Below, piece by piece: positions 4,083 through 53,251 of a DNA stretch of 64,000 nucleotides. The stretch covers positions 22,258,001 through 22,322,000 of the forward strand of contig NC_088853.1 of assembly GCF_963853765.1 (NCBI RefSeq). The letters are read 5' to 3'. This DNA is from Magallana gigas. Taxonomy: Eukaryota. Numbering within the stretch: position 1 is the stretch's first letter; every line of letters starts with the position of its first letter. The notes beneath the pieces were generated by a model. It was given only the letters and a program-made list of their open reading frames with translations, ran no database searches and had not been told where the DNA came from. The position numbers were made by a program, and so were the translations under genes.

Positions 4083-5535
4083 TTTGATACTGACTGACTA
4101 CAAATAAGTGTTTTGTTTTTCCTGAGGACTATCAAATGACATACTTATTTTTTTCACAAAAACGCATGTACAAGATGCCTATAACTTTGTCCAAATTAAC
4201 TCATTTAAACTTAAAATTACTAATTTCACATTTCATATACTCTTTAAAAATCTTCGCTTAACACATATTTACTATCAATGTTTTGTTTTGTTTTTGTTTC
4301 TTTTTTTTGCTATTCAATTGTAATCGTTTTCTCCCTATTTGAGCAAATTGCGATGAGGCCATTATGTTTTGTTCCAGACACAACAATGTGACGTCAATAT
4401 TCATAGGGCAACTATCCTTATTTTACAAAATTGCAAGGGGCAGTTACTCCAGATTTTTAAAGAATTTATAGCATGTGGTTTCTGTATTTGAAAATATGAA
4501 ATGTCGAAATGAGTAGGGGAAGCGTCGATCAATAATGGCCATATTGCCTAATATTAATTCTCAGTGAACTAACAAAGAGATATATGAGGAAATCACGTGC
4601 TATGTTTAAACCAACAAAAGTGTGACATTTCAGTCTGAGGGAAAAATAATATATATATATATAAGGTACATGCTACTAACATTGTATTTTTATGCTATGT
4701 TATTTGTTAAAATATAATTTCAAAAAATTTCAAAAACGAATATTGCATTTGTATTAGAGTAAAAAAATGGTTACCTTTTACATTCTCGGGAACACATCTT
4801 TTTTCAATTCTTTTTGTTCTCTCTGTTTATGAAAAAGAATTATAGTGAATACTTTGTGTATCTTTTTTTAAAAACGAGCTTATATGTCTCTAGTTAGATG
4901 CAAAAGTATCATTTTAAGTATATTTTAGTAAAATAGCTACCTGAAATATCATGAATTTTTGTATCCAAATTCTGCAACTCTTTGATGTATTTAGATTCCT
5001 GTTCAGGATCCATAGAGCATTTTGTGATCTTAACAACTGCGTTCTGATAAATGGTTGATATGCGTAGGTACTTTTCCAAATCCTGAATAATGCTGGAAAT
5101 TTCTAGAACTTTCTTATTAAAATCGGTGTCGGAAATAAATATATCTGTACAATGCCCGTACTTGTTTCTTATCAAACGAATTCTTTCAATGTTTGCTGAC
5201 ACACTCCTGTCACATGGGATTGGTTCATTTCCCCATTGTTTTGCATGTGGTGAAATGTTCGATATATTTCGCAAAAGAAAAAAGAGTAAAGTTATATCAA
5301 AGTCTGAGTAGTTTCCATTGTGTATGACCCTTTCTTGTTCTTTGGTAATTGGAGGTTGTTTCCGTTTTTGTAAATTAGCTAAATGTGTCGTTACCTTCTG
5401 TGACAGTGTTGACGGGGGGATCTCTTTCTTGAGAACATCACAAAGAAAATCTGTACAAGGACCCAATATAATGCGGGCTACACGAGCAAGGTTGGTGGTT
5501 TCCCGCGTTGATGCATACTTTGAGTTAGCCATCAT
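1..5535 (-). CDS. HEPN (DZIP3-like) - nSTAND3-type NTPase - ankyrin repeat protein, 3' end outside window; exons complement(4941..5535, 4775..4822, <1..2839), >1160 aa
   Basis: Hand translation gives one open frame across three GT-AG, phase-1 junctions. Exon 1: STRETTNLARVARIILGPC...DFDITLLFFLLRN...IERIRLIRNKYGH (DZIP3-type HEPN). 48-nt exon: ERTKRIEKRCVPENVK. Exon 3: Walker A GVPGSGKT, Walker B LFVIDD, sensor TCR, FPLLCKLF, FIHDS, then ~10 ankyrin repeats (e.g. TPLIAACENG, SPLQSACQEGH, TPLIVACYKAH). Missing from the ORF track because it has no stop inside the window. Confidence 0.93.
3622..3860. mobile_element. Diverged one-ended fragment of the TIR element family at 42833-43780, inside the HEPN-STAND gene intron
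   Basis: CACGGGGGTGTTAAAGAAGCATGTGGA resembles the TIR at 42833/43780; the following ~210 bp align by eye with the reverse complement of 43530-43755. Confidence 0.75.
3996..4079. repeat. (AT)n microsatellite
   Basis: Uninterrupted AT dinucleotide run. Confidence 0.98.
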
Positions 5536-24530: not shown

Positions 24531-25270
24531 GTAAGTAAGATTTGCTATAGCTGGACTTCTTTTTTCAATCGTGGGTCTACTTGTACATGTATGTATACAC
24601 ACTTGTAAGTTCAATTATTGGGTCACTGTTTAAAACTAGTATATTAGGGTAGTGTTAATTTTATTTTGTTATTTGTGTTCATTGTTCATTAATTGAAAAG
24701 TTAATCAACTGATGTTACATTAATTCATTTTTTTTATATCTAACTTTTTCTAACAACTTTTATTGCTCCTTAATCTAAAACATGTTGTTATGAGACAAAA
24801 TTGATAATTACTTCAGACTGTTTGGCGATCGGATGAGCGGTCAGGCATTTTAATTGTTGAAAGCAAGTATTATAGATTATAAACTATTTATTTTTTATTA
24901 ATATTTCGAACAGAATAAATTGTACTGTTATCAATTCTGTAGAAGTACAATTCATTTATAATTTTTTAAAAATTTTGGCAAGTCTTTTATTCAATTTCAA
25001 AATGTGGAATATTTCAGTATTTTTTTTTTCGTAAGTAAATACATGTGTTTGTTAGCATTGCTTTAATTTTTAAGCAGAAAAATGTATTATAATATAGTTT
25101 GTACAACGAGGTAACAAACCATTCGGGTATTTGGCAATATTACAAGGGATTATGGGTTCAAAATGTGAAGCGATGATATTTCATTTATTCCAAAAGTAAA
25201 AATTTTCATTTAAAAAGACATGTGGACTTATGAGTCCAAGTAAAAGTGAAAAAATGAAAATTCCAATTAA

Positions 25271-26023: not shown

Positions 26024-26412
26024 TTAAGCTTTATTTCATATCTATTGATATTTAAACTTATAAAATCAGCAAGTTTTGGCGCTGAATTTAGTGTATATAA
26101 ATTGCACGAAGCTTTACAACAGAGCATTATACATTTAGAAAAATTCTATAAAAATAAGAAATTTGCACAACATTAGGCAGGTACCCAAAATATGAAAAAA
26201 CGTTTGAAAATTTCGAGGTTTTTCCTATAGTAAGTGGCAGCTTTTACGTGCGTGACCCATGTTTGAACCTACTTATGGAATATATTATTTCAAATAGTAA
26301 CGTGGGTTCTACCTACATAAAAATTGCACTGAAAAGGGGCCTATTCTCTATAGCTTCAGTGCACTTGCCCATTTTTTATGAAATACGAGTCACCATGCTT
26401 GTAAATACTCTA

Positions 26413-26470
<58 letters not shown>

Positions 26471-26522
26471 AAACGCGTTTTAATCATAGCATTCAAAGTT
26501 TGTATGTCTGCATTTCAATAGA

Positions 26523-29080
26523 ATGTCTACTGAAAAAGAAACACTACAACGGCGTAGCCAGCCGGTACCAGGGGGACAACAAGCCCCACCAGCCCCACCA
26601 GCTCAGCCCCCATCGGGCTTCCCACCCCACTCACAGGGCGCTAATCCAAACGAGCACATGCCGCCGCCATTACACGGGGCTAACCTTCCATCACAACCAC
26701 AGAACCTACCACAAGGTGGCTATCAACAACAGCCGCAATATATATACCCACAAGTACCACAATACGTTTTGCCCCAGAACCCTTCGTTGTCACAGCAACC
26801 ACCTACGGGATACATTCGTTACAATCTTAACCACCCAGTTATGTTTTGTCCGACGCCAGCTCCACAGAAATCCATTTTAGAGGCGTATATGCTACTGATT
26901 GTGCTAGGCTTATTCGGAGGACACCATTTCTACCTTAGACGTCCTGTATGGGGTATTTTGTACCTTTTTTCCTTCGGATTACTTGGCGCAGGATGGCTGA
27001 TTGATATTTTTAGACTTCCGGTCTTGGTATCACGATGTAATAACGACGCTTCACAACAAAACCCAAACCTAGCTAAGAAAAAGCATTTAGATGACGCATA
27101 TGTGCTCTGGTTTCCAGGCGGTTTTCTAGGTAGGTTTTATTTTAGACAATAGTGTAAGTCATGACTATAGATTTGTTTTACTTTAAAAAGCAATACCATA
27201 TTAAATGGATAAAATATTAATGGGTAAAATACATAAGAAAAATATTCAATAATCTAATAGGAGTAGGCGAGAAGGCATTATATTTACAAGCATAGTAGAT
27301 GGGAAGATAGTATTCTGATAGTAAATTGATTTGATTTATTTTTTGTCAATTAAGTAACGCGATAACAGCGTTAAAATCCTTCTTTTTCTATTCAGGTCTT
27401 CATCATTTCTACTTGAATAACATTGGCCTTGGAGTTCTATATTTGTTTACTTTCGGACTCCTCGGTGTTGGTTGGTTAATTGATGCCTGTCTGATGCCAT
27501 ACCATGTTAAGAAAGCCAACTCAAACATTCCAGATTCAATTGAGAAAAGCGCAGCCGCAACTTGCATCCTAGCTGTTTCTCCTGCGGGACTTCTCGGGGC
27601 TCATCATTACTATTTAAATAGAATCGGGTTCGGGCTTCTGTATACTTTCACTTTCGGTATTTTCGGTGTTGGTTACATTGTTGATTGGTTTCGTTTCCCA
27701 ATCTTACTCGAGCGCTATAACAAAAGTAAAGAAATTGGTCACACTTCTTACAAAAACCTTGATGACGCCTATCTTCTCTGGTTTCCACTCGGACTCCTCG
27801 GGTTTCATCATTTCTACCTAAACAGACCTGTTTGGGGGCTTCTGTACATGTTTACCTTCGGTTTGTTCGGCATTGGGTGGCTGATTGATTTTTGCCGGAT
27901 GTGTAAGTTGGTTGTTAATTGTAACAAAGATATTGTTGAACGAGTGCATCTAACCCGGAATAATCGGAGTGTTGCTTATCCCAACTATATTCCAGGACAG
28001 TATTATGGCAACATGCCGACATCAACAGGTAAGAAAATAAATGTGCATGTTACAAATCGTAATTTTCATCCAATCCACGAAAAGTGATGCTCACAAATAT
28101 TGACGAAACCACAGTATAAACCCTTTCATAAACATGTATAAAACCCATTTTCAGTTTATACATTTATTGCCGTCTTTAAATGCTACGAACTAGTCTATGT
28201 TATCCAAAATATTTCTTCAAGAATGAAAAGATTTCTTTTTGTATTCTATGTTTTACATATTTTAATGGCTTCCCTATCTTAAATCAAGTTGGAGGTCACG
28301 TGCCGGTCAGCTACGGTCAGTTTGGTCCTTGTCCACCGGGATATTCCAACCCAAATCCGGGGATATATCCAACACAACAAAACGGTGAGTTGACAAAAAC
28401 AATAGGTAAATGAAAACAAAATCACTGTTAACAAACATTTTAAGAAAATTGCGAGCATCAAAATGAAGTCGTCGCTAATAGACATTGGCTTTAAGTATCT
28501 GAAATTTACTTAATCGGGAAGATTAAGTGAAATTATCAAAATTAAAAAAAATATGTTGATTGTGTCTTTAAGACAAAGTGTCATGCATGATTTAGGTTCA
28601 TCCTAATTAGGTACTTATGTATGAAGTTATTTTCAAGGTTATGTAAAACTGAAAAGGTACAAAAACTAATTCTTGCAGTCAATATTTAGCAAAACCTTTA
28701 TCTATTTGAGCTGATATTCTACCAATACATACTCATGTAAGAGTATCTTTTTCAGTTTATAAGTAAATCTTTCAACAGTGGATAAAAAGGCGAATACATG
28801 TTAATGTACATATGATTACCGCTAAACTAAGAACGTTTATAGTCCTATATTTCATTCAATTATCTCAACACATCATATTTTTCTTTAAATCTTCTTAAAA
28901 GAGAACAGAAACAAAGGGAAAACACTCTCACTTTGATTGATATATTTTTGAACAGCACATTCAAATATCACATTTAAATATGTTATATTGTCCTTTTTAA
29001 CAGGATATGGTGCAGTTCATGGAATGAATGACCAACCCCCTCCATACGAGGCCGCGTCCATTCCTACCAAAGGTCACTAG
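26523..29080 (+). CDS. Four-TM2-domain membrane protein, copy A; exons join(26523..27129, 27396..28028, 28289..28384, 29004..29080), 470 aa
   Basis: P/Q-rich N-terminus; four repeats of AY.L....G..G.HH(F/Y)YL.....G.LY..(S/T)FG..G.G(W/Y)..D (TM2 pattern); P/G/Y-rich tail with PPGY and PPPY. All introns GT-AG, phase 1; total 1413 nt. Confidence 0.93.
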
Positions 29081-30170
29081 TTCAAAGGTCAAGGTCGCGA
29101 TATAATGGCCTTTATGCAATCGACGTCACTAGCGTCCAAAGTTTGTTTTGGAATTTGTTACAGGTGTATTTGATATTTCTAGGATAAAGAAAGTGTCTGA
29201 ACTTTCTAGTGTGGGAACTTTGTATAATGCATACATCAGCTTTTCTAGCTATATCCGATGTTGAAACTCATTTTATCATCATTTAAAATTATGATTGACG
29301 GACCTGTTGTATTATAGCATGGCTTGTTCAAATTGCTACAAATATGTCTGAGCTAGAAGATAAATATAGCATAGACTTACTTTAAAAAGAAACCTGTTTT
29401 AGAATAAATTGATGTTTTAAAATAGTTTTAATGCATGTTTTTTAAGTACAATAACGATTATATAGCCTATCTGTATGTTACATGTACATTTCGGTTGATA
29501 ATAAAATTGGTTTGTTGTGTTTAATTTACATACTTGTCAGTGTCCTTTAAATATAGGCCTGATATATCTTTACAGCTATATATATATATATATATATATA
29601 TGGATAATTATGCAAATGTCATAATTTCCTAAAGAAGAGATTACTTCCTCAAGTTTTGATAAAGTGGGTTTTATTATCCATGTCATTTTAGTCTTATTGC
29701 CGCCGAATTTACAGAAACCCCTTATGTTCACCGGTTACAGTTTATTCTATTACCCCAACGAAGGAGCCCTTATGCAAGTACATATATATGCAATACTGAA
29801 ATCTGATTGGTTAAGACGCCGTTGATAATCCGTTCTATTACCCCCAGCGTTCGCAACGCACTTAGCAACAGGTAACACAACGAATTGCTACATGAGCGTA
29901 AATTATGCGCATATAGTTCGCCATAGAATTCACTTCATTACTTTATAAAAGCAAAAAAGTGTTCTTTAAATTTAAGACATCCAGTAAAATAAAATAAATT
30001 GTGCCTGTTTATATGTTTAGATGGGTAAGAGTTGAAATTGACTCCCTGAGAAAACCAATGTCAACCGGCGGTACAGAACAGGCACTATTTATACAATACC
30101 TGTGACAGGTGCGTGGTTTGATTTCAAAATTCATTATAAATCGAAAATTCATCTACTTTAGATGAACATG

Positions 30171-30349
30171 CATAAGAGTCGGAAGCGAACGGGCGGGCTA
30201 GACCCCCCCCCCCCTCCTCCCCCATGTAAAGTTATACATAACCATAACCAAAGACCGTTCGGTTTTTGTTTTTTGGGGGGTTTTTTGGTCGAGATTTTTA
30301 ACAAGACTAGAATCCCCCCATACTTTCAATTTTTTTTCCGACGCCACTG
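30171..30349. mobile_element. Poly-G/C MITE (..GTCGGAA / TTCCGAC.. ends); copies at 36462-36639, 56032-56195, 56555-56737
   Basis: Shared short TIRs and G/C homopolymer interiors. Confidence 0.7.
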
Positions 30350-30905
30350 ATATGTATCAACAACACAGTGTGCTTTGGAATATTAGAAAATAGCGGGAAT
30401 TATTTTTATAAACAATTTTTGAAGAAAGAAAAAATAAAACTGAATGTTTAAAATCAGTCATCAATTTGAACTTCTTCTTTTTTTGAGTGAAAACACGATT
30501 GACACAAAAGAGTTCTGTAATTTAAAAATTTTGTCATTTAATCTTTTTCTTATTCATATTTTGTCTACGTTAAAAGTTTTAGAAATAAAGTTTTCTTGCT
30601 TGATAGGCTAATAATATTCACTTTTAATGAAAAGAAAGCAAACAATATGTTCAATGTATATTGTTCCGTCATCTGTTATCTCACAAACTTTGACCATGAA
30701 GCAATGTTATGGTTCTCACTGTTCAAACGTGAATCAGGCTGATACAAATTACTATTAGTCATTTTGACGATATATTCATAGATACATAGATAATGAAGCA
30801 AGTAGATAGCACTTTGTTACAAAAATAAATGTTGACATTTAACCTAATATTTAACAAAATGCTTTAAATCATAACTGACTAATAAAATTATATGGTACTA
30901 GATAA

Positions 30906-31126
30906 CTTTCAGGGTTATTTTCGCCCCGTGTAATTTTTGCCCCGTGTAATTTTCGCCTTTCTACACTTGCCAACAGTTTCCCCCAGTCTTGAATTCGCCC
31001 AGCTATTGGTGTTAAAAAAAATAGAATAGGACACATTGGAATTCGCGTACTCGTAAAATCGCTCAGTGACAACGAGGGCAAAAGGAACGGAAAATAAAAC
31101 GTGGGCGAATATTTCCCTGTATACAG
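30906..31126. mobile_element. MITE with CTGTATACAGGG...TTCGCCC ends, left end decayed; copy at 37196-37416
   Basis: Right end GGGCGAATATTTCCCTGTATACAG inverted relative to left CTTTCAGGGTTATTTTCGCCC; internal CGCCCCGTGTAATTTT repeats. Confidence 0.6.
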
Positions 31127-33189
31127 TTATACATTCATAAGTACATGAAAGACATATGTTTTGCCTAGGACTAGAATGTCTCGAAGTCATTGAATGAATC
31201 GCGTCACGTGACTGCCTTAAATTTCTTTACACGGCGGGCGTCAAAATTTATACGGCAACATGGCGGACGTAACGTTATTTGAGCTGATTTTTTACACAAA
31301 CGTTCAAACATACCTTTCATTCTTAAGCCCCAAAATATTTAGAGTGACCCCCTTTGCCCGTGACGTAAAAAAACGATCTTATATATACAACTGCATCCAG
31401 GTTTGCACAGAAATGTGTAGTGTTGGTAGAGTCTATAGAAGGCTCGGCTCCGCCTTGCCTTCTATGGACTTTACTGACCCCACAAATTTCTGTAAACAGT
31501 CAGTAACAGACCTGATAAGTAATAATGTTGTGTTATCACAATATCAGTGTGGTTTGGCACTATTTTTTTTGAAGTAAGGGCTGGGCCACGAGTCATCATT
31601 CATAGGAATGTTATTTGTAAAACTATACCACAAAGCTTTGCCAAAGATGGCAATTTTGCAATTTTAAAATAAAATCATTCAAATCCAACGAAATCCCAGA
31701 TACGCTATATTAAATATCAAACCAACGAATATACACAAACATTTAAATAACTCTCAACCGAACGATCCGCTCCAGTATTGGATCTCATCACCTGACTGTG
31801 TCGAGTGTCTAAAAATAGACTGTAAACAAAACTATGTCAATATCACGAGTTGGTGACCGAAATCCCGGCGTCTAAGATCAATAGAACCGAACCAATTGTG
31901 ACGTAACGGATCTTGTGACTCCGGTTCTTTGAATAAAACACCTGTGTTTTTGCTGTATGTCTGTCTGTCAGTATCGGATATTAGCCAGGTAAGTAAGATT
32001 TGCTGTATAGCTGGACTTCTTTTGTATTCGTGGGTATATCTGTACATGTATGTAAACACACAAGTTCAATTATTGGGTCACTGTTTGAAACTTGTATATT
32101 AGGGTTGTGTTTAATTTTATTTTGCAATTCTTGTTCATTAATTGAAAAATTAATCAACTGATGTTACATTCATTCATTTGTTTTTTTATATTAAACTTTT
32201 TCTAACAACTTTTATTGCTCCTATATCTATTACATTCAAATGTTAATACATGTTATTATAAGACAAAATTGAATATAACTTCAGACTTAATGAGTGGTGA
32301 AGGAATGAGCGGTCAGGCATTTTAATTGTTCACGCTTATAAATTATATATATTTTTTTATATTTCGAAGAGAATGAATTGTTCTGTTATCAGTTCTGTAG
32401 AAGTACAAATCATTTATAATTTTAAATTTCGGTAAGTCTTTTATCATGTTTCAAAATGTGGAATATTTCAATATATTTTTCGTAAGTAAATATATGTGTT
32501 AGCATTATTTTAATTATTAAGCAGAAAAATGTATTATAATATAGTTTGTATAACGAGGTAACAAAATCATTCGGGTATTTGGCAATATTATAAGGGTTAT
32601 GTGTTAAAAATGTGAAGCAATGATATTTCATTTATTCCAAAAGTAAACATTTTCATTTATAAGGACATGTGCACTTATGAGTCCAAGTAAAAAGTGAAAA
32701 AAATGAAAATTCAAATTAAGCATTATTTTATTTTTATAAATATTCAAACTAAAAGAATCAACAAGTTTTAGCGCTGAATTTAGTGTATAAAAATAGCACG
32801 AAGCTTTAAAACATAGTACGAGTCAGCCGACATTTGTGATTCTATAAAGTAAATCGAGGACAGGTATTCATTTCAAAGTAACTGTTTACTGTCAGACTAA
32901 TCGTGTACAAACTTGTGGAAAAGACAAAAGACGCATTATACATTTAGAAAACTCCTGTGAAAAAAAGTTTGCACAACATTAGGCAGGTACCCAGCATATA
33001 AAAAAACCGTATAAAAAATTCGATGCAGCTTTTACGTGCGTGACCCATGTTTGAACCCACTTATGGAATAAATTATTTCAAATAGTAACGTGGGTTATAC
33101 CTACATAAAAATTGCACTGAAAAGGGGCTCGTTCTCTACAGCTTAAGTGCACTTGCTTTTTCATATGAAATAAGAGTCAACATGCATGT

Positions 33190-33253
<64 letters not shown>

Positions 33254-33305
33254 AAACGCGTTTTAATCATAGCATTCAAAGTTTGTATGTCTGCATTTTA
33301 ATAGA

Positions 33306-35371
33306 ATGTCTACTGAAAAAGAAACACTACAACGGCGTAGCCAGCCGGTACCAGGGGGACAAGAAGCCCCACCAGCCCAGCCCCCATCGGAATTCACACC
33401 CAACCCACAGGGCGCTAATCCAAACGGGCACCTGCCGCCACCATTACACGGGGCTGACCTTCCATCACAACCACAGAACCTACCACAAGGTGGCTATCAA
33501 CAACAGCCACAATATATATACCCACAAGTACCACAATACGTTTTGCCCCAGAACCCTTCGTTGTCACAGCAACCACCTACGGGATACATTCGTTACAATC
33601 TTAACCATCCAGTTATGTTTTGTTCGATTTTTTTTGTCAATTAAGTAACGCGATAACAGCGTTAAAATCCTTCTTTTTCTATTCAGGTCTTCATCATTTC
33701 TACTTGAATAACATTGGCCTTGGAGTTCTATATTTTTTTACTTTCGGACTCCTCGGTGTTGGTTGGTTAATTGATGCCTGTCTGATGCCATACCATGTTA
33801 AGAAAGCCAACTCAAACATTCCAGATTCAATTGAGAAAAGCGCAGCCGCAACTTGCATCCTAGCTGTTTCTCCTGCGGGACTTCTCGGGGCTCATCATTA
33901 CTATTTAAATAGAACCGGGTTCGGGCTTCTGTATACTTTCACTTTTGGTATTTTCGGTATTGGTTACATTGTTGATTGGTTTCGTTTCCCAATCTTACTC
34001 GAGCGCTATAACAAAAGTAAAGAAATTGGTCACACTTCTTACAAAAACCTTGATGACGCCTATCTCCTCTGGTTTCCACTCGGACTCCTCGGGTTTCATC
34101 ATTTCTACCTAAACAGACCTGTTTGGGGGCTTCTGTACATGTTTACCTTCGGTTTGCTCGGCATTGGGTGGCTGATTGATTTATGCCGGATGTGTAAGTT
34201 GGTTGTTAATTGTAACAAAGATATTGTTGAACGAGTGCATCTTACCCGGAATAATCGGAGTGTAGCTAATCCCAACTATATTCCAGGACAGTATTATGGC
34301 AACATGCCGACATCAACAGGTAAGAAAATAAATGTGCATGTTACAAATCGTAATTTTCATCCAATCCACGAAAAGTGATGCTCACAAATATTGACGAAAC
34401 CACAGTATAAACCCTTTCATAAACATATATAAAACCCATTTTCAGTTTATACATTTATTGCCGTGTTTAAATGCTACGAACTAGTCTATGTTATCCAAAA
34501 TATTTCTTCAAGAATGAAAAGATTTCTTTTTGTATTCTATGTTTTACATATTTTAATGGCTTCCTTATCTTAAATCAAGTTGGAGGCCACGTGCCGGTCA
34601 GCTACGGTCAGTTTGGTCCTTGTCCACCGGGATATTCCAACCCAAATCCGGGGATATATCCAACACAACAAAACGGTGAGTTGACAAAAACAATAGGTAA
34701 ATGAAAACAAAATCACTGTTAACAAACATTTTAAGAAAATTGCGAGCATCAAAATGAAGTCGTCGCTAATAGACATTGGCTTTAAGTATCTGAAATTTAC
34801 TTAATCGGGAAGATTAAGTGAAATTATCAAAATTAAAAAAAATATGTTGATTGTGTCTTTAAGACAAAGTGTCATGCATGATTTAGGTTCATCCTAATTA
34901 GGTACTTATGTATGAAGTTATTTTCAAGGTTATGTAAAACTGAAAAGGTACAAAAACTAATTCTTGCAGTCAATATTTAGCAAAACCTTTATCTATTTGA
35001 GCTGATATTCTACCAATACATACTCATGTAAGAGTATCTTTTTCAGTTTATAAGTAAATCTTTCAACAGTGGATAAAAAGGCGAATACATGTTAATGTAC
35101 ATATGATTACCGCTAAACTAAGAACGTTTATAGTCCTATATTTCATTCAATTATCTCAACACATCATATTTTTCTTTAAATCTTCTTAAAAGAGAACAGA
35201 AACAAAGGGAAAACACTCTCACTTTGATTGATATATTTTTGAACAGCACATTCAAATATCACATTTAAATATGTTATATTGTCCTTTTTAACAGGATATG
35301 GTGCAGTTCATGGAATGAATGACCAACCCCCTCCATACGAGGCCGCGTCCATTCCTACCAAAGGTCACTAG
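33306..35371 (+). pseudogene. TM2 gene copy B with internal deletion; segments 33306..33627 (fused to an intron remnant), 33687..34319, 34580..34675, 35295..35371
   Basis: Relative to copy A, ~26854-27334 is missing (first TM2 repeat, half of the second and the splice donor). As assembled, the first frame stops at 33642-33644 (112 aa); the downstream exons are intact with no stops. Confidence 0.8.
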
Positions 35372-38300
35372 TTCAAAGGTCAAGGTCGCGATATAATGGC
35401 CTTTATGCAATCGACGTCACTAGCGTCCAAAGTTTGTTTTGGAATTTGTTACAGGTGTATTTGATATTTCTAGGATAAAGAAAGTGTCTGAACTTTCTAG
35501 TGTGGGAACTTTGTATAATGCATACATCAGCTTTTCTAGCTATATCCGATGTTGAAACTCATTTTATCATCATTTAAAATTATGATTGACGGACCTGTTG
35601 TATTATAGCATGGCTTGTTCAAATTGCTACAAATATGTCTGAGCTAGAAGATAAATATAGCATAGACTTACTTTAAAAAGAAACCTGTTTTAGAATAAAT
35701 TGATGTTTTAAAATAGTTTTAATGCATGTTTTTTAAGTACAATAACGATTATATAGCCTATCTGTATGTTACATGTACATTTCGGTTGATAATAAAATTG
35801 GTTTGTTGTGTTTAATTTACATACTTGTCAGTGTCCTTTAAATATAGGCCTGATATATCTTTACAGCTATATATATATATATATATATATATGGATAATT
35901 ATGCAAATGTCATAATTTCCTAAAGAAGAGATTACTTCCTCAAGTTTTGATAAAGTGGGTTTTATTATCCATGTCATTTTAGTCTTATTGCCGCCGAATT
36001 TACAGAAACCCCTTATGTTCACCGGTTACAGTTTATTCTATTACCCCAACGAAGGAGCCCTTATGCAAGTACATATATATGCAATACTGAAATCTGATTG
36101 GTTAAGACGCCGTTGATAATCCGTTCTATTACCCCCAGCGTTCGCAACGCACTTAGCAACAGGTAACACAACGAATTGCTACATGAGCGTAAATTATGCG
36201 CATATAGTTCGCCATAGAATTCACTTCATTACTTTATAAAAGCAAAAAAGTGTTCTTTAAATTTAAGACATCCAGTAAAATAAAATAAATTGTGCCTGTT
36301 TATATGTTTAGATGGGTAAGAGTTGAAATTGACTCCCTGAGAAAACCAATGTCAACCGGCGGTACAGAACAGGCACTATTTATACAATACCTGTGACAGG
36401 TGCGTGGTTTGATTTCAAAATTCATTATAAATCGAAAATTCATCTACTTTAGATGAACATGCATAAGAGTCGGAAGCGAACGGGCGGGCTAGACCCCCCC
36501 CCCCTCCTCCCCCATGTAAAGTTATACATAACCATAACCAAAGACCGTTCGGTTTTTGTTTTTTGGGGGGTTTTTTGGTCGAGATTTTTAACAAGACTAG
36601 AATCCCCCCATACTTTCAATTTTTTTTCCGACGCCACTGATATGTATCAACAACACAGTGTGCTTTGGAATATTAGAAAATAGCGGGAATTATTTTTATA
36701 AACAATTTTTGAAGAAAGAAAAAATAAAACTGAATGTTTAAAATCAGTCATCAATTTGAACTTCTTCTTTTTTTGAGTGAAAACACGATTGACACAAAAG
36801 AGTTCTGTAATTTAAAAATTTTGTCATTTAATCTTTTTCTTATTCATATTTTGTCTACGTTAAAAGTTTTAGAAATAAAGTTTTCTTGCTTGATAGGCTA
36901 ATAATATTCACTTTTAATGAAAAGAAAGCAAACAATATGTTCAATGTATATTGTTCCGTCATCTGTTATCTCACAAACTTTGACCATGAAGCAATGTTAT
37001 GGTTCTCACTGTTCAAACGTGAATCAGGCTGATACAAATTACTATTAGTCATTTTGACGATATATTCATAGATACATAGATAATGAAGCAAGTAGATAGC
37101 ACTTTGTTACAAAAATAAATGTTGACATTTAACCTAATATTTAACAAAATGCTTTAAATCATAACTGACTAATAAAATTATATGGTACTAGATAACTTTC
37201 AGGGTTATTTTCGCCCCGTGTAATTTTTGCCCCGTGTAATTTTCGCCTTTCTACACTTGCCAACAGTTTCCCCCAGTCTTGAATTCGCCCAGCTATTGGT
37301 GTTAAAAAAAATAGAATAGGACACATTGGAATTCGCGTACTCGTAAAATCGCTCAGTGACAACGAGGGCAAAAGGAACGGAAAATAAAACGTGGGCGAAT
37401 ATTTCCCTGTATACAGTTATACATTCATAAGTACATGAAAGACATATGTTTTGCCTAGGACTAGAATGTCTCGAAGTCATTGAATGAATCGCGTCACGTG
37501 ACTGCCTTAAATTTCTTTACACGGCGGGCGTCAAAATTTATACGGCAACATGGCGGACGTAACGTTATTTGAGCTGATTTTTTACACAAACGTTCAAACA
37601 TACCTTTCATTCTTAAGCCCCAAAATATTTAGAGTGACCCCCTTTGCCCGTGACGTAAAAAAACGATCTTATATATACAACTGCATCCAGGTTTGCACAG
37701 AAATGTGTAGTGTTGGTAGAGTCTATAGAAGGCTCGGCTCCGCCTTGCCTTCTATGGACTTTACTGACCCCACAAATTTCTGTAAACAGTCAGTAACAGA
37801 CCTGATAAGTAATAATGTTGTGTTATCACAATATCAGTGTGGTTTGGCACTATTTTTTTTGAAGTAAGGGCTGGGCCACGAGTCATCATTCATAGGAATG
37901 TTATTTGTAAAACTATACCACAAAGCTTTGCCAAAGATGGCAATTTTGCAGCTGCATAAGATGCTGCTTCGTGAAAAATAAAAGCGGCTATAAAATCTCC
38001 AAAAAAAAAATAAAAACGTATATTTTCTAGCATATTTGATTTTTTTTTAAAAATGCATAACCATATTGGCGCTGTAATAATTATCCAACATAGTGTTTTG
38101 TCATAAACTTTTTAAAAGAGATGTAGCTTACTAATGTTGTGCATTAATACACTTCGAACAAATAAAACAACACTTTCATATGAAAGAAAAATATTAGAAT
38201 ATCAAATGTAGCAAAGCAAATAGGTATATTTAATATTGGGTTTAAGTTAATCAAGAAGAAAAAGACGAGTAGAAGGAAAAAGAAAAACACATATTTATTA

Positions 38301-40020
38301 TATTTATATGTTGATAGAAAAACCAAATAATTGATCTTTTTATCACGAAAATGGAAATGGAGACAACCCCTGTATATGCAGCATATACATTATCCAAAAA
38401 AAAATGAGGAAAGATAATAGAAGAAGGGATAGTAAAATGGTTTGCATTAAACATTTCTTCACTATATTACATAACTAGATAAACTAACGAACGCACGTAC
38501 ATGTAATCAATAAATTAAAAAATGTAGCATTAATTGATAATTATGAAGTTTTTTTATTTTAATTTAAAGGATACTCGTTTACTTAAAAAAGGTGTTAATC
38601 AAAAAATGCGAACAGTATACCATTCACATCAGTATATAAACAAATACATGATAAAATAATAAATTTTAAATTAAGATATTCATTTTTCTTTTTTGATATT
38701 TAATTATGTCATCCTATAAATAGCATTTATAATCGTTTCCATCATTTGTTAATTTAAAAAAGTAATTCTTTGATATTTTATTTTGCATTGATACATGTAC
38801 CTTTCATAGAATGATTTTGCTTTTTTAAACGTTCATACAACAATTTAAAATAAGTATATGTAGGCATGTAGTTTAGTAGTACCTAAAAAATGGGCAAAAT
38901 TTTTCTTTGTATTTGAATTCATTAAAACTTATAATTGTAAGAGTTGTCTATGTGTACCTATCGTTATGCCAATTGATAAGGCAAGATAAATGTAACCGAT
39001 AAAAACTGAGTCATAAATTTTGACAATGATATACAGTCTATTTGAATGCACCGTATTGTAACGGTAAAACACACATGCATATGTCGCTACTGAACTGAAA
39101 TAAATTATGTTAATATGCTTCTTGTGTACTAAATAGTGTAATACACGTTCAATCTTATTTTTATTCAGAAATACATGTATATAACACTCTTTAACAATAT
39201 CTGATTAACCCGGATCAGGACAAACAGTTATAAATTATAACAAGCGAACAAATTCTAAAAAATGTTCCCCTTTGTACGTTTTTGTTTTTGAAATATCTAT
39301 CATCAACAAATGTTCAATCCTGATTTATACTTTATTAGACATATATGCTATTTTCCATGTGCACACCCTCGCAGAGTGGAGTGACAAAGTTGACATATAT
39401 CATGGGTGTTTTGAACTATTTTGGGTTTTAGCATGGTACATGCAACATATTTCATGAATTAAGGAAATATTGTTTTAGTATTTTATGAGGGATAAATATG
39501 CTGAGGACAAAGTGGCATTTTTGTTTCAGCGAAGGTACTGCGTTTCCAATAAACTAATTTCAATAATTGTTTCTAAATAAAATTCAACTGCTTTGCCTTT
39601 TATATAATAATTGTTATGTAGGTTATGTGTAATGATTTTTACAAAAATTAGCGTATTCTTAATGAAAAAAATTCAATATCTTTGTTTTTAATGGTGGAAC
39701 ATCTGAATTTCTTGTTTAAAAATTCCGTATCAATTAAATTCTTGAAAAAAAAGAGTTCATAGTTGGAGAAATAAAAGTTATGCAGTCAATTATTTTCTTA
39801 TGGATTTAATATTTCGTCTCGTAAAATATTTAATTTTAGGAAGATATCTCATCCATAAGGTGAACCATGATAAAAACAAAAGTGGTAAACACAATCTCAA
39901 AGCAAATAAGTTTGTTGAAAAAACCGTAAATAGGAGTTGCAAATATGCCATCTTTGCAATAAGATACTTATCTAGCTCAATTTTGATGATTGGTATTTTT
40001 GGCATCTATATCTTCTTAGA

Positions 40021-42343
40021 ATGAGCACCGAACTAGAAACTCAACAACAACACACCCAGCCGGGGCCTGATAGTCAACAAGCCACAACAGACCAGTTCCC
40101 GCCAGGCTTACCAGTCAATCCGCAAGGTGCTTATCCGAACGGGCACCTGTCGCCGCCATTACATGGGGCTCACCTTCCGGCACAATATGGCTACCAGCAA
40201 CAGCAACCGCAATATGGATACCCACAATACGTCTCGCCGACGAATTCGCCAGACTCCAAAAAACTTATGAGGGAATACGAGGGGAACAGCCACAATCACG
40301 CGGCTATGTGTCCAGAGCCGACGTCACGAATACGTGTTTCTCTCATTGAGGCTTACTTATTGATGATTGTCCTGGGCATTTTTGGAGCGCACCATTTTTA
40401 CCTTAAGCGCCCACGATGGGGACTCCTCTACCTTTTCACTTTTGGCTTGCTCGGCGCTGGATGGCTCATTGACATATTTAGACTTCCGGTCTTGGTTGCC
40501 CGATTTAATAACGAAGCTTCTCACCCAGATCCAAGCCTTGCCAAGAAAAAGCGTTTGGATGATGTTTATGTGTTGTGGTTTCCAGGTGGTCTTATAGGTA
40601 GGTTACATTATACTGTAACGGTGGAAAGCAGTACATGAATTATGAAATATTTAACTATAGTTGATAGAATATTAAAACTACACATAAAACTAATACATTT
40701 ACTCTGGTAAAGCTCCTTATCTTTCAATTTATTTTTCACCAGGGCTTCATCATTTCTACCTGAATAACACCAGGCTCGGAATTTTCTATCTCTGCTCATT
40801 CGGAATTTTCGGTATTGGTTGGTTAATTGATGCCTTTATAATGCCATACCATGTAAAAATCGCCAACTCTGATAGCCAGGATTCCACTGAAAAAAGATTT
40901 ACAACGACCTGCATCCTAGCTATTTCTCCTACGGGACTCTTCGGAGCTCATCATTACTATTTGAACCGATTTGGTTTTGGGCTTCTCTATACTTTCACTT
41001 TCGGGATTTTTGGCGTAGGATACATCGTGGATTGGTTTCGTTTTCCAGTTTTACTAAAGCGCTCTAACAAAGGCAGGACAATGCTCCACAGTACCCACAA
41101 ACACCTCGATGACGCTTACCTTCTCTGGTTTCCACTCGGATTCCTCGGGTTTCATCATTTCTACTTAAACAGGCGTGGCTGGGGACTACTGTACATGTAT
41201 ACTTTCGGTTTCCTTGGCATTGGGTGGCTCGTCGATCTTTGCCGGATGCGGACGTTGGTAGAAAATTGTAATAGAGACATTGACGAACGAGTGCATCTTA
41301 CCGGAAATAATATAGGTATACCTAACCCGAGCTTTAACATTGGGCAGTATTACGGTAACTTGCCAATAAGGACAGAAAAACATGCTTGTAAATAAATTCT
41401 ATCTAAATTACATGTCATTTAAAATTATGTATTGGAATAAAAAGCTAAAATACGCTATAGAATCGGTAAGATAAGTTCAAAGGGGGGTTTAGAGGTGGGC
41501 TTTTGTTTTCTTAATCAACAGTATTTAGCCTCATCGACCTAATTATTTTTCGTTTATTGTCAGTCGGGGGTCACGTGCCGCTCAACTACGGACAGACGGG
41601 TCCCTCTCCACCGGGATACTCCAACCCACATCCGGGTATTTATCAAACACAGCAGAACGGTGAGTTTGAATTACAAATTGACAACAGGGTACCAGAAACA
41701 GATTATAATTTTGTTTCACTGAATCAGATCATTGAAGTTAATATCAAAAAGATATTCAAACCCAAGAACAACGTAGAGAATTTAAGTAAGGTACATGTGG
41801 GAAGTCTGTTAATTTCACCTAGATATACACGGCGGATTTAAAATCTTTTTTTAAAAAGGCATTTACCGANNNNNNNNNNNNNNNNNNNNNNNNNNNNNNN
41901 NNNNNNNNNNNNNNNNNNNNNNNNNNNNNNNNNNNNNNNNNNNNNNNNNNNNNNNNNNNNNNNNNNNNNNNNNNNNNNNNNNNNNNNNNNNNNNNNNNNN
42001 NNNNNNNNNNNNNNTCTTGGAATTTTCATTTAGCTACATGTATATAGGTCTGTGCATGTACAGGTACTGATAATGCACATAATAGTAAAATTGAGATGGT
42101 AATTAGTGATCATCTCATTTGCGTTATCACGAATTAACACCGCCATATAAGTACTTGGTTTTAATGAACGCGTTTTATTTAGCTTCTACAATGTAAATCA
42201 ATTTTCATCTTTAAACGTACATATCTTCTCTACGTGGTAACTTAAATACCTTTGATTTTTTAACAGGATATGGTTCTGTTCCTGGAATGAATGACCAACC
42301 CCCTCCATACGAGGCCGCGTCAGTTCCTACCAAAGGTCACTAG
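40021..42343 (+). CDS. Four-TM2-domain membrane protein, divergent copy C; exons join(40021..40597, 40743..41387, 41564..41659, 42267..42343)
   Basis: Same exon phases, four HH(F/Y)YL TM2 repeats, 96-nt and 77-nt terminal exons identical in size to copy A, PPGY and PPPY retained; frame open throughout. Confidence 0.92.
41870..42014. other. Assembly gap (145 N) in the last intron of TM2 copy C
   Basis: Run of N. Confidence 1.
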
Positions 42344-52123: not shown

Positions 52124-53251
52124 TCACGCTTTCTTGCTACAATTTTTCAAATTCCACGCTTCATGCAACATTTTAGGGGTCAGTCGGTGTGACGTCACTA
52201 ACTTTTTCGATTGGTACTCACATCCGATTTTCTGGAGGGCGGCGTGAAATCCCGGCAGGTGCGTGGCGTTTAACCCGAGTCTATTCAAACACAGAGACAC
52301 ATACACGTCCTCTAGATAAATGAACGGGACGTCCTTAGAGACTTTATACACTTTCTCCACGACGTTCATACTAGTCACGTAACCCGTACCGGAACAATAT
52401 GGCGGATACAACTTATTGGGGTACATTTCGTAGGTCACTGACCACTTTTCGGTTTTGGACCTGATTGGCTCGCGGCTGAGGTTACAGTATCCCCCGATAC
52501 CTTTCTCTAGCACAGAACTATATTTCGTCACTGCATCCTTCAAGGAATTCAAATTCACAAACATGTCGTCATCTGTTTTCATGAAGAATTTGGCGACCTT
52601 GCACTTGAGACTTGCCCACTTGAAGGCCATCATTGTTTTCAAGGTCAAATTATTATAACTATCTACGAAGTCTTCTTGAATGATGTCACGATAGGTGGCG
52701 CTCTCCGTTTCCAAGGCAACCTGATCCGCGTTGTTTGACGTCGCCCCGAGCAGGAAGGCGTACCTGACGTCACCTGTATTCGATCTCGTATGCGTCAGCC
52801 ATGTTTCTCGGAGCGCCTTCCTCCTGGCTGTGTTTACATGAGTTGTAGAAATGAGCACGATGACCTTGACATCTCTTTTATCGGCCCCGACACTGCATAT
52901 TTCCTCGTTATCCAAAATATAAGTGTAATGATGCGGAAAGCACGAATCGCACACATCCGGGCGTTTAGACACTAACGTCCGGTTTTGTGCGGAAATCCAA
53001 TCGGTTTTGACGATGTTAATCGAATGGGTTGGCGCTTTAGTGGCAAGATTGGAAGTCTGGAAATAAAGCACACGTTTTATATCCGTGTTGACGGTCTTGA
53101 CGATGGGGACTAAACTTTTCAGGTTGTTGTTGATGTACATCAGGTGCATTAAAAGAAGAACTGAGGACGTGGCAAGAACGTAAACAAAGTTCAACATCCC
53201 ACACGGTGTACAGAAAAAACGCCTCAAACGGCGCCACAAATTGAACGCCAT
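52124..53251 (-). CDS. Beta-1,3-galactosyltransferase 1-like (GT31 / Galactosyl_T), single coding exon, 375 aa
   Basis: N-terminal type II anchor (LNFVYVLATSSVLLLMHLMYI), RRKALRETW, DIIQEDFVDSYNNLTLKT, FMKTDDDMFV (DxD), YPPYCSGTGYV, EDVYVSLC. Strong acceptor CCTTTTTTCATTACAG places the exon start at 53321, so non-coding exon(s) lie upstream. Confidence 0.95.
   Translation of the reverse strand: MAFNLWRRLRRFFCTPCGMLNFVYVLATSSVLLLMHLMYINNNLKSLVPIVKTVNTDIKRVLYFQTSNLATKAPTHSINIVKTDWISAQNRTLVSKRPDVCDSCFPHHYTYILDNEEICSVGADKRDVKVIVLISTTHVNTARRKALRETWLTHTRSNTGDVRYAFLLGATSNNADQVALETESATYRDIIQEDFVDSYNNLTLKTMMAFKWASLKCKVAKFFMKTDDDMFVNLNSLKDAVTKYSSVLEKGIGGYCNLSREPIRSKTEKWSVTYEMYPNKLYPPYCSGTGYVTSMNVVEKVYKVSKDVPFIYLEDVYVSLCLNRLGLNATHLPGFHAALQKIGCEYQSKKLVTSHRLTPKMLHEAWNLKNCSKKA

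What the first reader, a model, noticed from the sequence alone, without database searches (positions are those of the whole stretch)
26523..42343. Tandem family of four-TM2-domain proteins with His-His motifs and two PPxY motifs
Seen: each intact copy (A, C) has four TM2 repeats, all with G.HH(F/Y)YL, a P/Q/Y-rich N-terminus without a signal peptide, and a tail with PPGY and PPPY, each on its own small exon and both conserved in the divergent copy C. Established: characterised animal TM2D1-3/almondex proteins have a single TM2 domain with a DRF motif and an N-terminal ectodomain and act in Notch/gamma-secretase biology; PPxY motifs recruit WW-domain Nedd4-family HECT ligases (as in Ndfip and LITAF). 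Inference: a distinct multi-pass class in which four HH pairs may form a metal or haem site, or a pore, at the membrane, with ubiquitin-ligase-controlled turnover, or which acts as a ligase adaptor. Local expansion suggests environmental or immune selection. Best candidate here for an undescribed system.
Basis: partly seen in the sequence, partly recalled or inferred. Interest (0 to 1): 0.75.

Follow-up and report, generated by a model that had tools for sequence, protein, structure and literature searches.

The report
Oyster four-TM2 membrane proteins with PPxY tails
Three tandem oyster genes (two intact, one broken) encode eight-helix membrane proteins made of four TM2 hairpins with a tail of ubiquitin-ligase docking motifs; they belong to an old, widespread and unstudied invertebrate family and are not a local oddity.

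Summary
Gene A (470 aa, spliced as predicted in RNA contigs) and gene C (453 aa, 94% identical to a C. gigas protein) each carry four Pfam TM2 domains, all with G.HH(F/Y)YL. Both have a P/Q-rich N-terminus with no hydrophobic start, and PPGY and PPPY on separate small phase-1 exons. Copy B lost TM2-1 and half of TM2-2 through a 486-bp deletion and is probably a pseudogene. The assembly gap lies inside intron 3 of C and does not touch the coding frame.

The architecture is not local. Four TM2 domains plus C-terminal PPxY occur in molluscs, annelids, a brachiopod, echinoderms and hemichordates, all annotated as uncharacterised. PPxY is present in 63 of 70 tails, against 14 expected from composition. 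Some relatives carry a C-terminal RING domain in that position.

The HH pair sits where bacterial TM2 domains have HR and TM2D1-3 have DR. The oyster DNAJC22/Wurst gene also has HH.

Best reading: an N-in/C-in membrane protein whose cytosolic PY tail engages Nedd4-type ligases, either as adaptor or as regulated cargo. The metal or haem idea could not be tested, because no model coordinates were available. Immune selection has no support. The scan had not noted this TM2 family before.

The parts
24499..24531 (+). 3' end of the 5' non-coding exon of gene A (donor CAG|GTAAGT); its start is not defined
   Evidence: Loose ends of RNA contigs at the acceptor just before the ATG match this stretch with 1-2 mismatches.
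26523..27129 (+). Gene A coding exon 1: P/Q-rich N-terminus, TM2-1 and the first helix of TM2-2
   Evidence: ORF and Pfam TM2; RNA joint 27129/27396.
27396..28028 (+). Gene A exon 2: rest of TM2-2, TM2-3, TM2-4 and the start of the tail
   Evidence: Pfam TM2, 3 stretches; RNA joints on both sides.
28289..28384 (+). Gene A exon 3 (96 nt, phase 1-1) carrying PPGY (28333-28344)
   Evidence: RNA joint 28028/28289 and a loose end at 28385; P0260 has the same junction.
29004..29435 (+). Gene A exon 4: PPPY (29036-29047), stop codon at 29078-29080, 3' UTR to about 29435
   Evidence: RNA depth and loose ends.
31957..31989 (+). 5' non-coding exon copy belonging to B
33306..33644 (+). Copy B truncated exon 1. 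The 486-bp deletion, at a TTTTGTC microhomology, joins the N-terminal coding part to the end of intron 1, and the frame then stops.
33687..35371 (+). Copy B exons 2-4 (33687-34319, 34580-34675, 35295-35371). They are open, keep their splice sites and are 98-100% identical to A.
40021..40597 (+). Gene C coding exon 1
40743..41354 (+). Gene C exon 2. The A-type donor is lost (AG|AAAAA) and an upstream donor TACG|GTAAC is used.
   Evidence: C. gigas K1QNR0 has the same QYY|VGGH junction; XP_019918474 uses a donor further upstream.
41564..41659 (+). Gene C exon 3 with PPGY (41608-41619)
41870..42014 (.). Assembly gap inside intron 3 of gene C; not coding
42267..42343 (+). Gene C exon 4 with PPPY (42299-42310) and the stop codon

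Best explanation
A and C encode eight-helix integral membrane proteins built from four TM2 hairpins. Both disordered ends face the cytosol. The conserved C-terminal PPxY motifs dock WW domains of Nedd4-family HECT ligases. The protein therefore acts in ubiquitin-dependent sorting in the endosome/Golgi/plasma-membrane system, either as a membrane adaptor that brings a ligase to clients bound by the TM2 core (as Ndfip or Bsd2 do) or as cargo regulated by the ligase.

Shown here: the gene models, their transcription, the four TM2 domains, the conservation of HH and PPxY, the RING-for-PY replacement in relatives, and the presence of WW-HECT genes in the genome.

Inferred: the topology, WW binding, the cellular compartment and the adaptor role.

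The HH pairs then lie at the non-cytosolic membrane face. I read them as a titratable variant of the polar pair found at the TM2 hairpin turn (HR in bacteria, DR in TM2D1-3). The role of the HH pairs themselves is unknown.
For: - TM2 x4 and the gene models.
- The AF2 model of the C orthologue is confident in the core (pLDDT above 95, pTM 0.73), while the tail scores below 60, consistent with disorder.
- PPxY is in 63 of 70 four-TM2 tails against 14.2 expected from shuffled tails, and in 16 of 18 against 3.2 among representatives at 50% identity. The last motif lies a median of 14 aa from the C-terminus. It is seen in bivalves, gastropods, a chiton, an annelid, a brachiopod, hemichordates and a crinoid.
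- Five relatives have a C-terminal RING (PF13920) above the Pfam cut-off, and ctenophore relatives have one below the cut-off. Seven of the eight RING-type proteins lack PPxY.
- Topology: K+R counts are 5.1 in the hairpin loops against 19.5 on the linker/termini side, in 70 of 70 proteins. There is no hydrophobic N-terminal segment.
- The genome has at least three WW+HECT genes.
- Known animal TM2 proteins are tied to endosomal function and endocytosis (PMC10409296).
Against: - No binding was shown; the WW-tail co-fold gave no verdict.
- The topology is inferred only. K+R density per residue is actually higher in the short hairpin loops, and TM2D1-3 are drawn with the opposite hairpin orientation (PMC8714088).
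- Some family members lack PPxY, for example the Lytechinus and Styela proteins.
- PPxY tails are common among membrane proteins flagged in this genome, so the motif says little about the specific role of the TM2 core.
Confidence: 0.5

Rival explanations
1. The TM2 core is itself a metal- or haem-binding site, a pH sensor or a small pore. It would be built from the eight His at one membrane face and the four conserved helix-2 Asp at the other. The PY tail would only set its abundance, as Nedd4 does for ENaC or DMT1.
For: - HH is kept in 66, 52, 65 and 64 of 70 proteins in TM2-1 to TM2-4.
- Asp in W-L-I-D is nearly invariant, and so are the glycine-rich helix-2 positions.
- All four HH pairs must lie on the same membrane side because the hairpins are repeated.
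Against: - In the closest bacterial 2xTM2 proteins the second position is Arg, and in TM2D1-3 the pair is Asp-Arg. Within the family it is sometimes R, Q, L or N. This fits an interfacial polar pair better than an obligate ligand.
- There is no fold match to any solved transporter, channel or cytochrome.
- His geometry could not be measured.
Confidence: 0.2
2. The PPxY motifs are read by non-ligase WW proteins (Yorkie/YAP, Kibra, WWOX, MAGI). The protein would then be a membrane scaffold for signalling and not a ubiquitin-pathway component.
For: PPxY is the generic group-I WW ligand, and the genome has many WW loci that are not next to a HECT domain.
Against: The RING-for-PY replacement in relatives points specifically to ubiquitin ligation.
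Confidence: 0.1
3. The tail motifs are a by-product of a Pro/Tyr-rich, low-complexity tail and have no function; the genes are ordinary TM2 proteins of unknown role.
For: The tails are rich in P, G, Q and Y.
Against: Observed PPxY is about 7 times the shuffle expectation and sits at a preferred distance from the C-terminus across phyla.
Confidence: 0.05

Closest known systems
TM2D1, TM2D2, TM2D3/Almondex (animal single-TM2 proteins; Notch signalling, endosomal function)
   Same: They share the Pfam TM2 hairpin. A single hairpin of the model superposes on TM2D1/3 models at 0.8-1.6 A with 38-47% identity.
   Different: TM2D1-3 have a signal peptide, an N-terminal ectodomain, one TM2 domain near the C-terminus, a DRF motif and no PY tail (PMC8714088). 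Here there is no signal peptide, there are four TM2 domains, the motif is HH, both ends are cytosolic and disordered, and the tail carries PPxY. The oyster keeps three separate DRF-type loci. The family repeat HMM scores them at only 20-39 bits.
DNAJC22 / Drosophila Wurst (multi-pass TM2 protein with a C-terminal J domain; clathrin-mediated endocytosis)
   Same: It is the best reviewed structural neighbour (Foldseek E 0.04-0.3). The oyster orthologue's TM2 domain has GLHHFYLG and the same extended unit, including the R-x-P...N stretch after helix 2, and scores 52.6 bits. The overall logic is the same: a TM2 membrane core followed by a cytosolic C-terminal module that recruits a machine.
   Different: DNAJC22 has one recognisable TM2 domain, further unrelated helices and a J domain. 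A and C have four TM2 domains and no J domain. The TM-scores are low (about 0.2).
Ndfip1/2, yeast Bsd2 and other PY-motif membrane adaptors of Nedd4/Rsp5
   Same: Small multi-pass membrane proteins with cytosolic PPxY motifs in disordered Pro-rich ends; this is the proposed mode of action.
   Different: There is no sequence or domain relationship: Pfam finds only TM2. Here there are eight helices, against three, and the motifs are C-terminal. Binding is untested.
Bacterial 2xTM2 proteins (YozV-like, 'NINE protein')
   Same: They share the same extended repeat unit and score 45-72 bits per repeat against the family HMM, higher than TM2D1-3.
   Different: They have two repeats, HR in place of HH, and no P/Q/Y-rich ends or PPxY.

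Membership tests
Pfam TM2 domain superfamily (PF05154) | HMM match above the gathering score (27.9 bits) | tested here: met
   54.7-123 bits on the window's coding pieces; 179 bits with 4 stretches on P0260.
Pfam TM2 domain superfamily (PF05154) | A pair of transmembrane helices joined by a short linker | tested here: met
   The AF2 secondary structure shows four helix-turn-helix units at pLDDT above 90; hydropathy segments agree.
TM2D1-3 / Almondex | N-terminal signal sequence and ectodomain | tested here: not met
   The N-terminal 113 aa are P/Q-rich, with a maximum 12-aa hydropathy of -0.25. SignalP and DeepTMHMM were not available.
TM2D1-3 / Almondex | A single TM2 domain with a DRF motif | tested here: not met
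   There are four domains, all with HH. DRF-type genes lie elsewhere in the genome.
DNAJC22 / Wurst | C-terminal J domain | tested here: not met
   Pfam finds only TM2 in P0260. The J domain is found at the separate locus on C2 at 16.23 Mb.
Nedd4-family adaptors (functional class, e.g. Ndfip) | Conserved PPxY in a cytosolic segment | tested here: inconclusive
   The motif and its conservation are shown. The cytosolic location is inferred from K+R counts, the missing signal peptide and the RING fusions.
Nedd4-family adaptors (functional class, e.g. Ndfip) | Physical binding to WW domains and an effect on ligase activity | not testable with these tools
   The co-fold gave no verdict; this needs pull-down and ubiquitination assays.
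Membrane haem or metal proteins | His ligands converging on one site | not testable with these tools
   The structure tool returns no coordinates. Only the shared membrane side of the His pairs can be inferred.

The most novel reading that the evidence does not exclude
TM2 would be a general membrane-embedded module that couples a luminal or extracellular cue to a cytosolic effector. The cue would be pH or a metal, read by the ring of His pairs at the hairpin turns. The effector would be a Nedd4 ligase recruited by PY motifs, a fused RING, or Hsc70 recruited by the J domain in DNAJC22. On this reading the four-TM2 PY family would suggest a working model for the still obscure TM2D1-3 proteins of Notch and Alzheimer biology.
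Probability: 0.12. Interest if true: 0.7.

Novelty: new variant of a known kind. Interest (0 to 1): 0.45.

Why it matters
The function of the TM2 domain is unknown, even though TM2D3 is linked to Alzheimer's disease risk and all three TM2D genes are needed for Notch signalling. The literature I searched treats animals as having three TM2D genes plus DNAJC22.

This family is a further, widespread animal TM2 class. None of the 120 best named hits came from a vertebrate or an arthropod. Its tail ends either in PPxY motifs or, in some relatives, in a RING domain. That gives a concrete, testable link between the TM2 core and ubiquitin-dependent membrane trafficking.

It also shows that the TM2 hairpin is probably used in the opposite membrane orientation from TM2D1-3.

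Tried and rejected
- Co-folding of an oyster Nedd4-like WW domain (L025:213-326) with the tail of P0260 (residues 400-467) scored 0.08 and gave no verdict. It is evidence neither for nor against binding.
- Searches of solved structures found nothing: phmmer against PDB, Foldseek against PDB with best E of 5, and VIA-align wide with best Z of 4.8, which is at noise level.
- I wanted to measure His-His distances, but the model's coordinates are not exposed.
- Repeat-by-repeat orthology across phyla, scoring each repeat against A's repeats 1-4, was only partly consistent and is not used as evidence.
- Literature searches for 'TM2 domain' with PPxY, or with molluscs, returned nothing relevant.
- The search of earlier findings had nothing near this place and no note containing 'TM2'.
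- B as a functional three-TM2 gene was rejected. The only cryptic donor downstream of the deletion lies directly after the in-frame TAA.
- B as an assembly artefact could not be tested, because read laying was already used. I think it unlikely: the 5' part of B is only 87-89% identical to A, and no gap separates the copies.
Full report
**What is there**

The window is AT-rich animal DNA. It comes from a 564-Mb oyster-type genome, at position C1:22.258-22.322 Mb. Three tandem copies of one gene lie on the + strand.

**Gene A**

Gene A has four coding exons: 26523-27129, 27396-28028, 28289-28384 and 29004-29080. All introns are GT..AG and phase 1, and the product is 470 aa.

Public RNA contigs laid on 26300-29700 support this model. 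They show joints exactly at 27129/27396 and 28028/28289. Loose ends fit 28384/29004. Depth is exon-shaped, and the 3' UTR runs to about 29435. The few stranded raw reads agree with a + strand RNA.

A transcript-derived database protein, P0260 (467 aa, a cluster of 178 sequences), is 95.5% identical to A over its full length and has the same junctions.

Loose ends at the acceptor just before the ATG match a 5' non-coding exon that ends at about 24531. This exon lies outside the finding's coordinates. B has its own copy of it, ending at about 31989.

**Gene C**

Gene C has exons 40021-40597, 40743-41354, 41564-41659 and 42267-42343, and gives 453 aa. It is 65% identical to A and 94% identical to C. 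gigas XP_019918474.

The exon-2 donor used in A is destroyed in C (AG|AAAAA). An upstream TACG|GTAAC donor keeps phase 1. C. gigas K1QNR0 uses this same junction, while XP_019918474 uses a donor still further upstream.

**The assembly gap**

The gap at 41870-42014 lies inside intron 3 of C. That intron is 606 nt, against 619 nt in A. Exons 3 and 4 on either side are on the same strand, in the same order and in compatible phase. The protein across their junction equals the C. gigas proteins. The gap therefore does not affect the coding reading.

**Copy B**

B's 3' part (33630-37950) is 99.65% identical to A's 27339-31660. Its 5' part is only 87-89% identical to A.

At the boundary, a 486-bp stretch of A is missing between two TTTTGTC microhomologies. 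The lost stretch held TM2-1, the first helix of TM2-2 and most of intron 1. The frame then stops at 33644.

B's exons 2-4 remain open and keep their splice sites. No usable donor restores the frame, so B is most likely a pseudogene.

**The protein**

Pfam TM2 (PF05154) matches all coding pieces above the cut-off, and P0260 has four stretches.

- In A the motifs are [21 protein letters not shown] and GFHHFYL.
- Each helix 2 carries W-L-I-D or Y-I-V-D.
- PPGY lies on exon 3 and PPPY on exon 4.
- C has the same layout.
- The 113-aa N-terminus is rich in P (27 residues) and Q (18 residues). It has no hydrophobic segment, so no signal peptide is apparent.

An AlphaFold2 model of the C orthologue, built with 74 homologues, is confident: mean pLDDT 85 and pTM 0.73, with the core above 95. 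It shows four helix-turn-helix units, each second helix extending beyond the membrane, and a low-confidence tail, consistent with disorder.

No solved structure resembles the model.

**How widespread the family is**

An exhaustive HMMER search with exon 2 found 3,196 TM2 relatives, 111 of them at E below 1e-30.

Named full-length relatives come from these groups:
- bivalves, gastropods and a chiton;
- annelids and a brachiopod;
- sea urchins and crinoids;
- hemichordates and a tunicate;
- ctenophores and protist transcriptomes.

All are labelled 'uncharacterized' or 'TM2 domain-containing protein'. None of the 120 best named hits came from a vertebrate or an arthropod. C. elegans has a multi-TM2 entry, ZK858.5.

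In this genome, a paralogous trio lies 650 kb away on the same chromosome: an A-like copy at 93%, a C-like copy at 91% and a third type. Two more loci lie elsewhere. Three single-TM2 DRF-type loci (TM2D1-3) and a DNAJC22-like locus are separate.

**The HH pair**

Among 70 proteins with exactly four TM2 motifs, HH occurs in 66, 52, 65 and 64 of them in repeats 1 to 4. The exceptions are HR, HQ, HL, HN and QH.

The closest bacterial relatives are 2xTM2 proteins with the same extended repeat unit, and they have HR at this position. The oyster TM2D1-3 loci have DR.

The oyster DNAJC22/Wurst locus has GLHHFYLG. It consists of a TM2 exon at C2:16.228 Mb with a J-domain exon 2.2 kb downstream.

A repeat HMM built from the family scores the different groups as follows:

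| Group | Score (bits) |
|---|---|
| Oyster DNAJC22 TM2 | 52.6 |
| Oyster TM2D loci | 38.7, 22.6 and 20.1 |
| Bacterial repeats | 45-72 |

HH is therefore a lineage-specific version of a polar pair at the hairpin turn, shared with DNAJC22. It is not a unique invention of this family.

**The PY tail**

PPxY occurs in 63 of 70 C-terminal tails, against 14.2 expected after shuffling each tail. Total motifs are 110 against 16.1 expected. Among representatives at 50% identity it occurs in 16 of 18 against 3.2 expected. The last motif lies a median of 14 residues from the C-terminus.

The motif is seen from oysters to hemichordates and a crinoid.

Eight sampled relatives end in a RING-like finger in that position:
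- Five pass the Pfam cut-off for zf-C3HC4_3: P0056, P0121, P0145, P0168 and P0179.
- The three ctenophore-type proteins do not pass it: P0037 and P0045 score below the cut-off, and P0156 has no Pfam RING hit (regex only).
- Seven of the eight have no PPxY.

The C-terminal end of multi-TM2 proteins thus either is an E3 ligase or carries the docking motif for one. In DNAJC22 it is a J domain.

**Topology (inferred)**

Four indirect lines place both ends and the inter-domain linkers in the cytosol:
- the number of helices is even;
- relatives carry cytosolic-type C-terminal modules;
- there is no signal peptide;
- K+R counts are 19.5 on the linker/termini side against 5.1 in the hairpin loops, in 70 of 70 proteins.

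This puts all four HH turns at the luminal or outer membrane face. That orientation is the opposite of the one drawn for TM2D1-3, where the DRF loop is intracellular (PMC8714088). One caveat: the per-residue K+R density is higher in the short hairpin loops.

**Mechanism**

My best reading (confidence 0.5) is a membrane protein whose cytosolic PY tail engages Nedd4-family WW-HECT ligases. The genome has at least three such genes. The protein would act as an adaptor or as regulated cargo in ubiquitin-dependent sorting.

This agrees with what is known of other animal TM2 proteins. Human TM2D1-3 were hits in an endosomal-function screen, and Wurst/DNAJC22 acts in clathrin-mediated endocytosis (PMC10409296).

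A co-fold of an oyster WW domain with the tail gave no verdict, so binding remains an inference.

The His pairs are strongly conserved and lie on one membrane side. However, their position is filled by Arg or Asp-Arg in relatives, no fold match points to a transporter or cytochrome, and I could not measure their geometry. Nothing supports or refutes immune or environmental selection.

**Novelty**

The domain is known, and the proteins sit in databases under automatic names. I found no paper that describes this architecture. The literature speaks of three TM2D genes plus DNAJC22 (PMC8714088, PMC10409296).

I rate it a new variant of a known kind, of moderate interest. The PY/RING/J alternation behind a TM2 core is the most useful lead.

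Earlier notes of this scan list many other PPxY membrane proteins in this genome, but none mentions TM2.

Noticed in passing
G000:C1:21.61-21.66 Mb (L003, L005, L006): A second, paralogous trio of four-TM2 genes lies 650 kb away on the same chromosome: one A-like (93%), one C-like (91%, with a TAG near the end of exon 2) and a third type (about 60-69%). The cluster as a whole appears to have been duplicated.
   Followed up: partly
G000:C2:16227884-16230406 (L023:8884-9261, L024:1149-1406): The oyster DNAJC22/Wurst-like gene has an N-terminal TM2 domain of the HH type (GLHHFYLG) and a J-domain exon 2.2 kb downstream. The HH variant is therefore shared with a protein that vertebrates also have.
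   Followed up: partly
P0056, P0121, P0145, P0168, P0179; P0037/P0045 (ctenophores); P0176: Multi-TM2 relatives carry a C-terminal RING finger in place of PPxY, and one carries a class-3 lipase domain.
   Followed up: partly
window 4909-5535 (-): An open frame with a DZIP3/hRUL138-like HEPN domain (PF18738, E 1e-21).
   Followed up: no
window 21985-22353 (+), with 20978-21532 (+): A C1q-domain exon (PF00386, E 6e-23), preceded by an open frame with only a weak coiled-coil hit, below the Pfam cut-off. C1q-domain genes are known to be much expanded in oysters.
   Followed up: no
window 52124-53251 (-): A single-exon galactosyltransferase ORF (PF01762, E 1e-52, with a weaker Fringe-like match).
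   Followed up: no
window 24441-24449 and 31899-31907: A TGACGTAAC (CRE-like) element about 50 bp upstream of the sequence matched by the 5' non-coding exon. It is conserved between A and B although this block is only 87% identical.
   Followed up: no
window 28289-28384 and 41564-41659: The PPGY exon is 96 nt with phase 1 on both sides. Skipping it would keep the frame and remove one of the two PY motifs. No skipped form was seen in the four runs examined.
   Followed up: no
window 26405-26474 and about 33140-33230: A long (CT)n microsatellite lies just upstream of the start codon of both A and B, inside the 5' intron.
   Followed up: no
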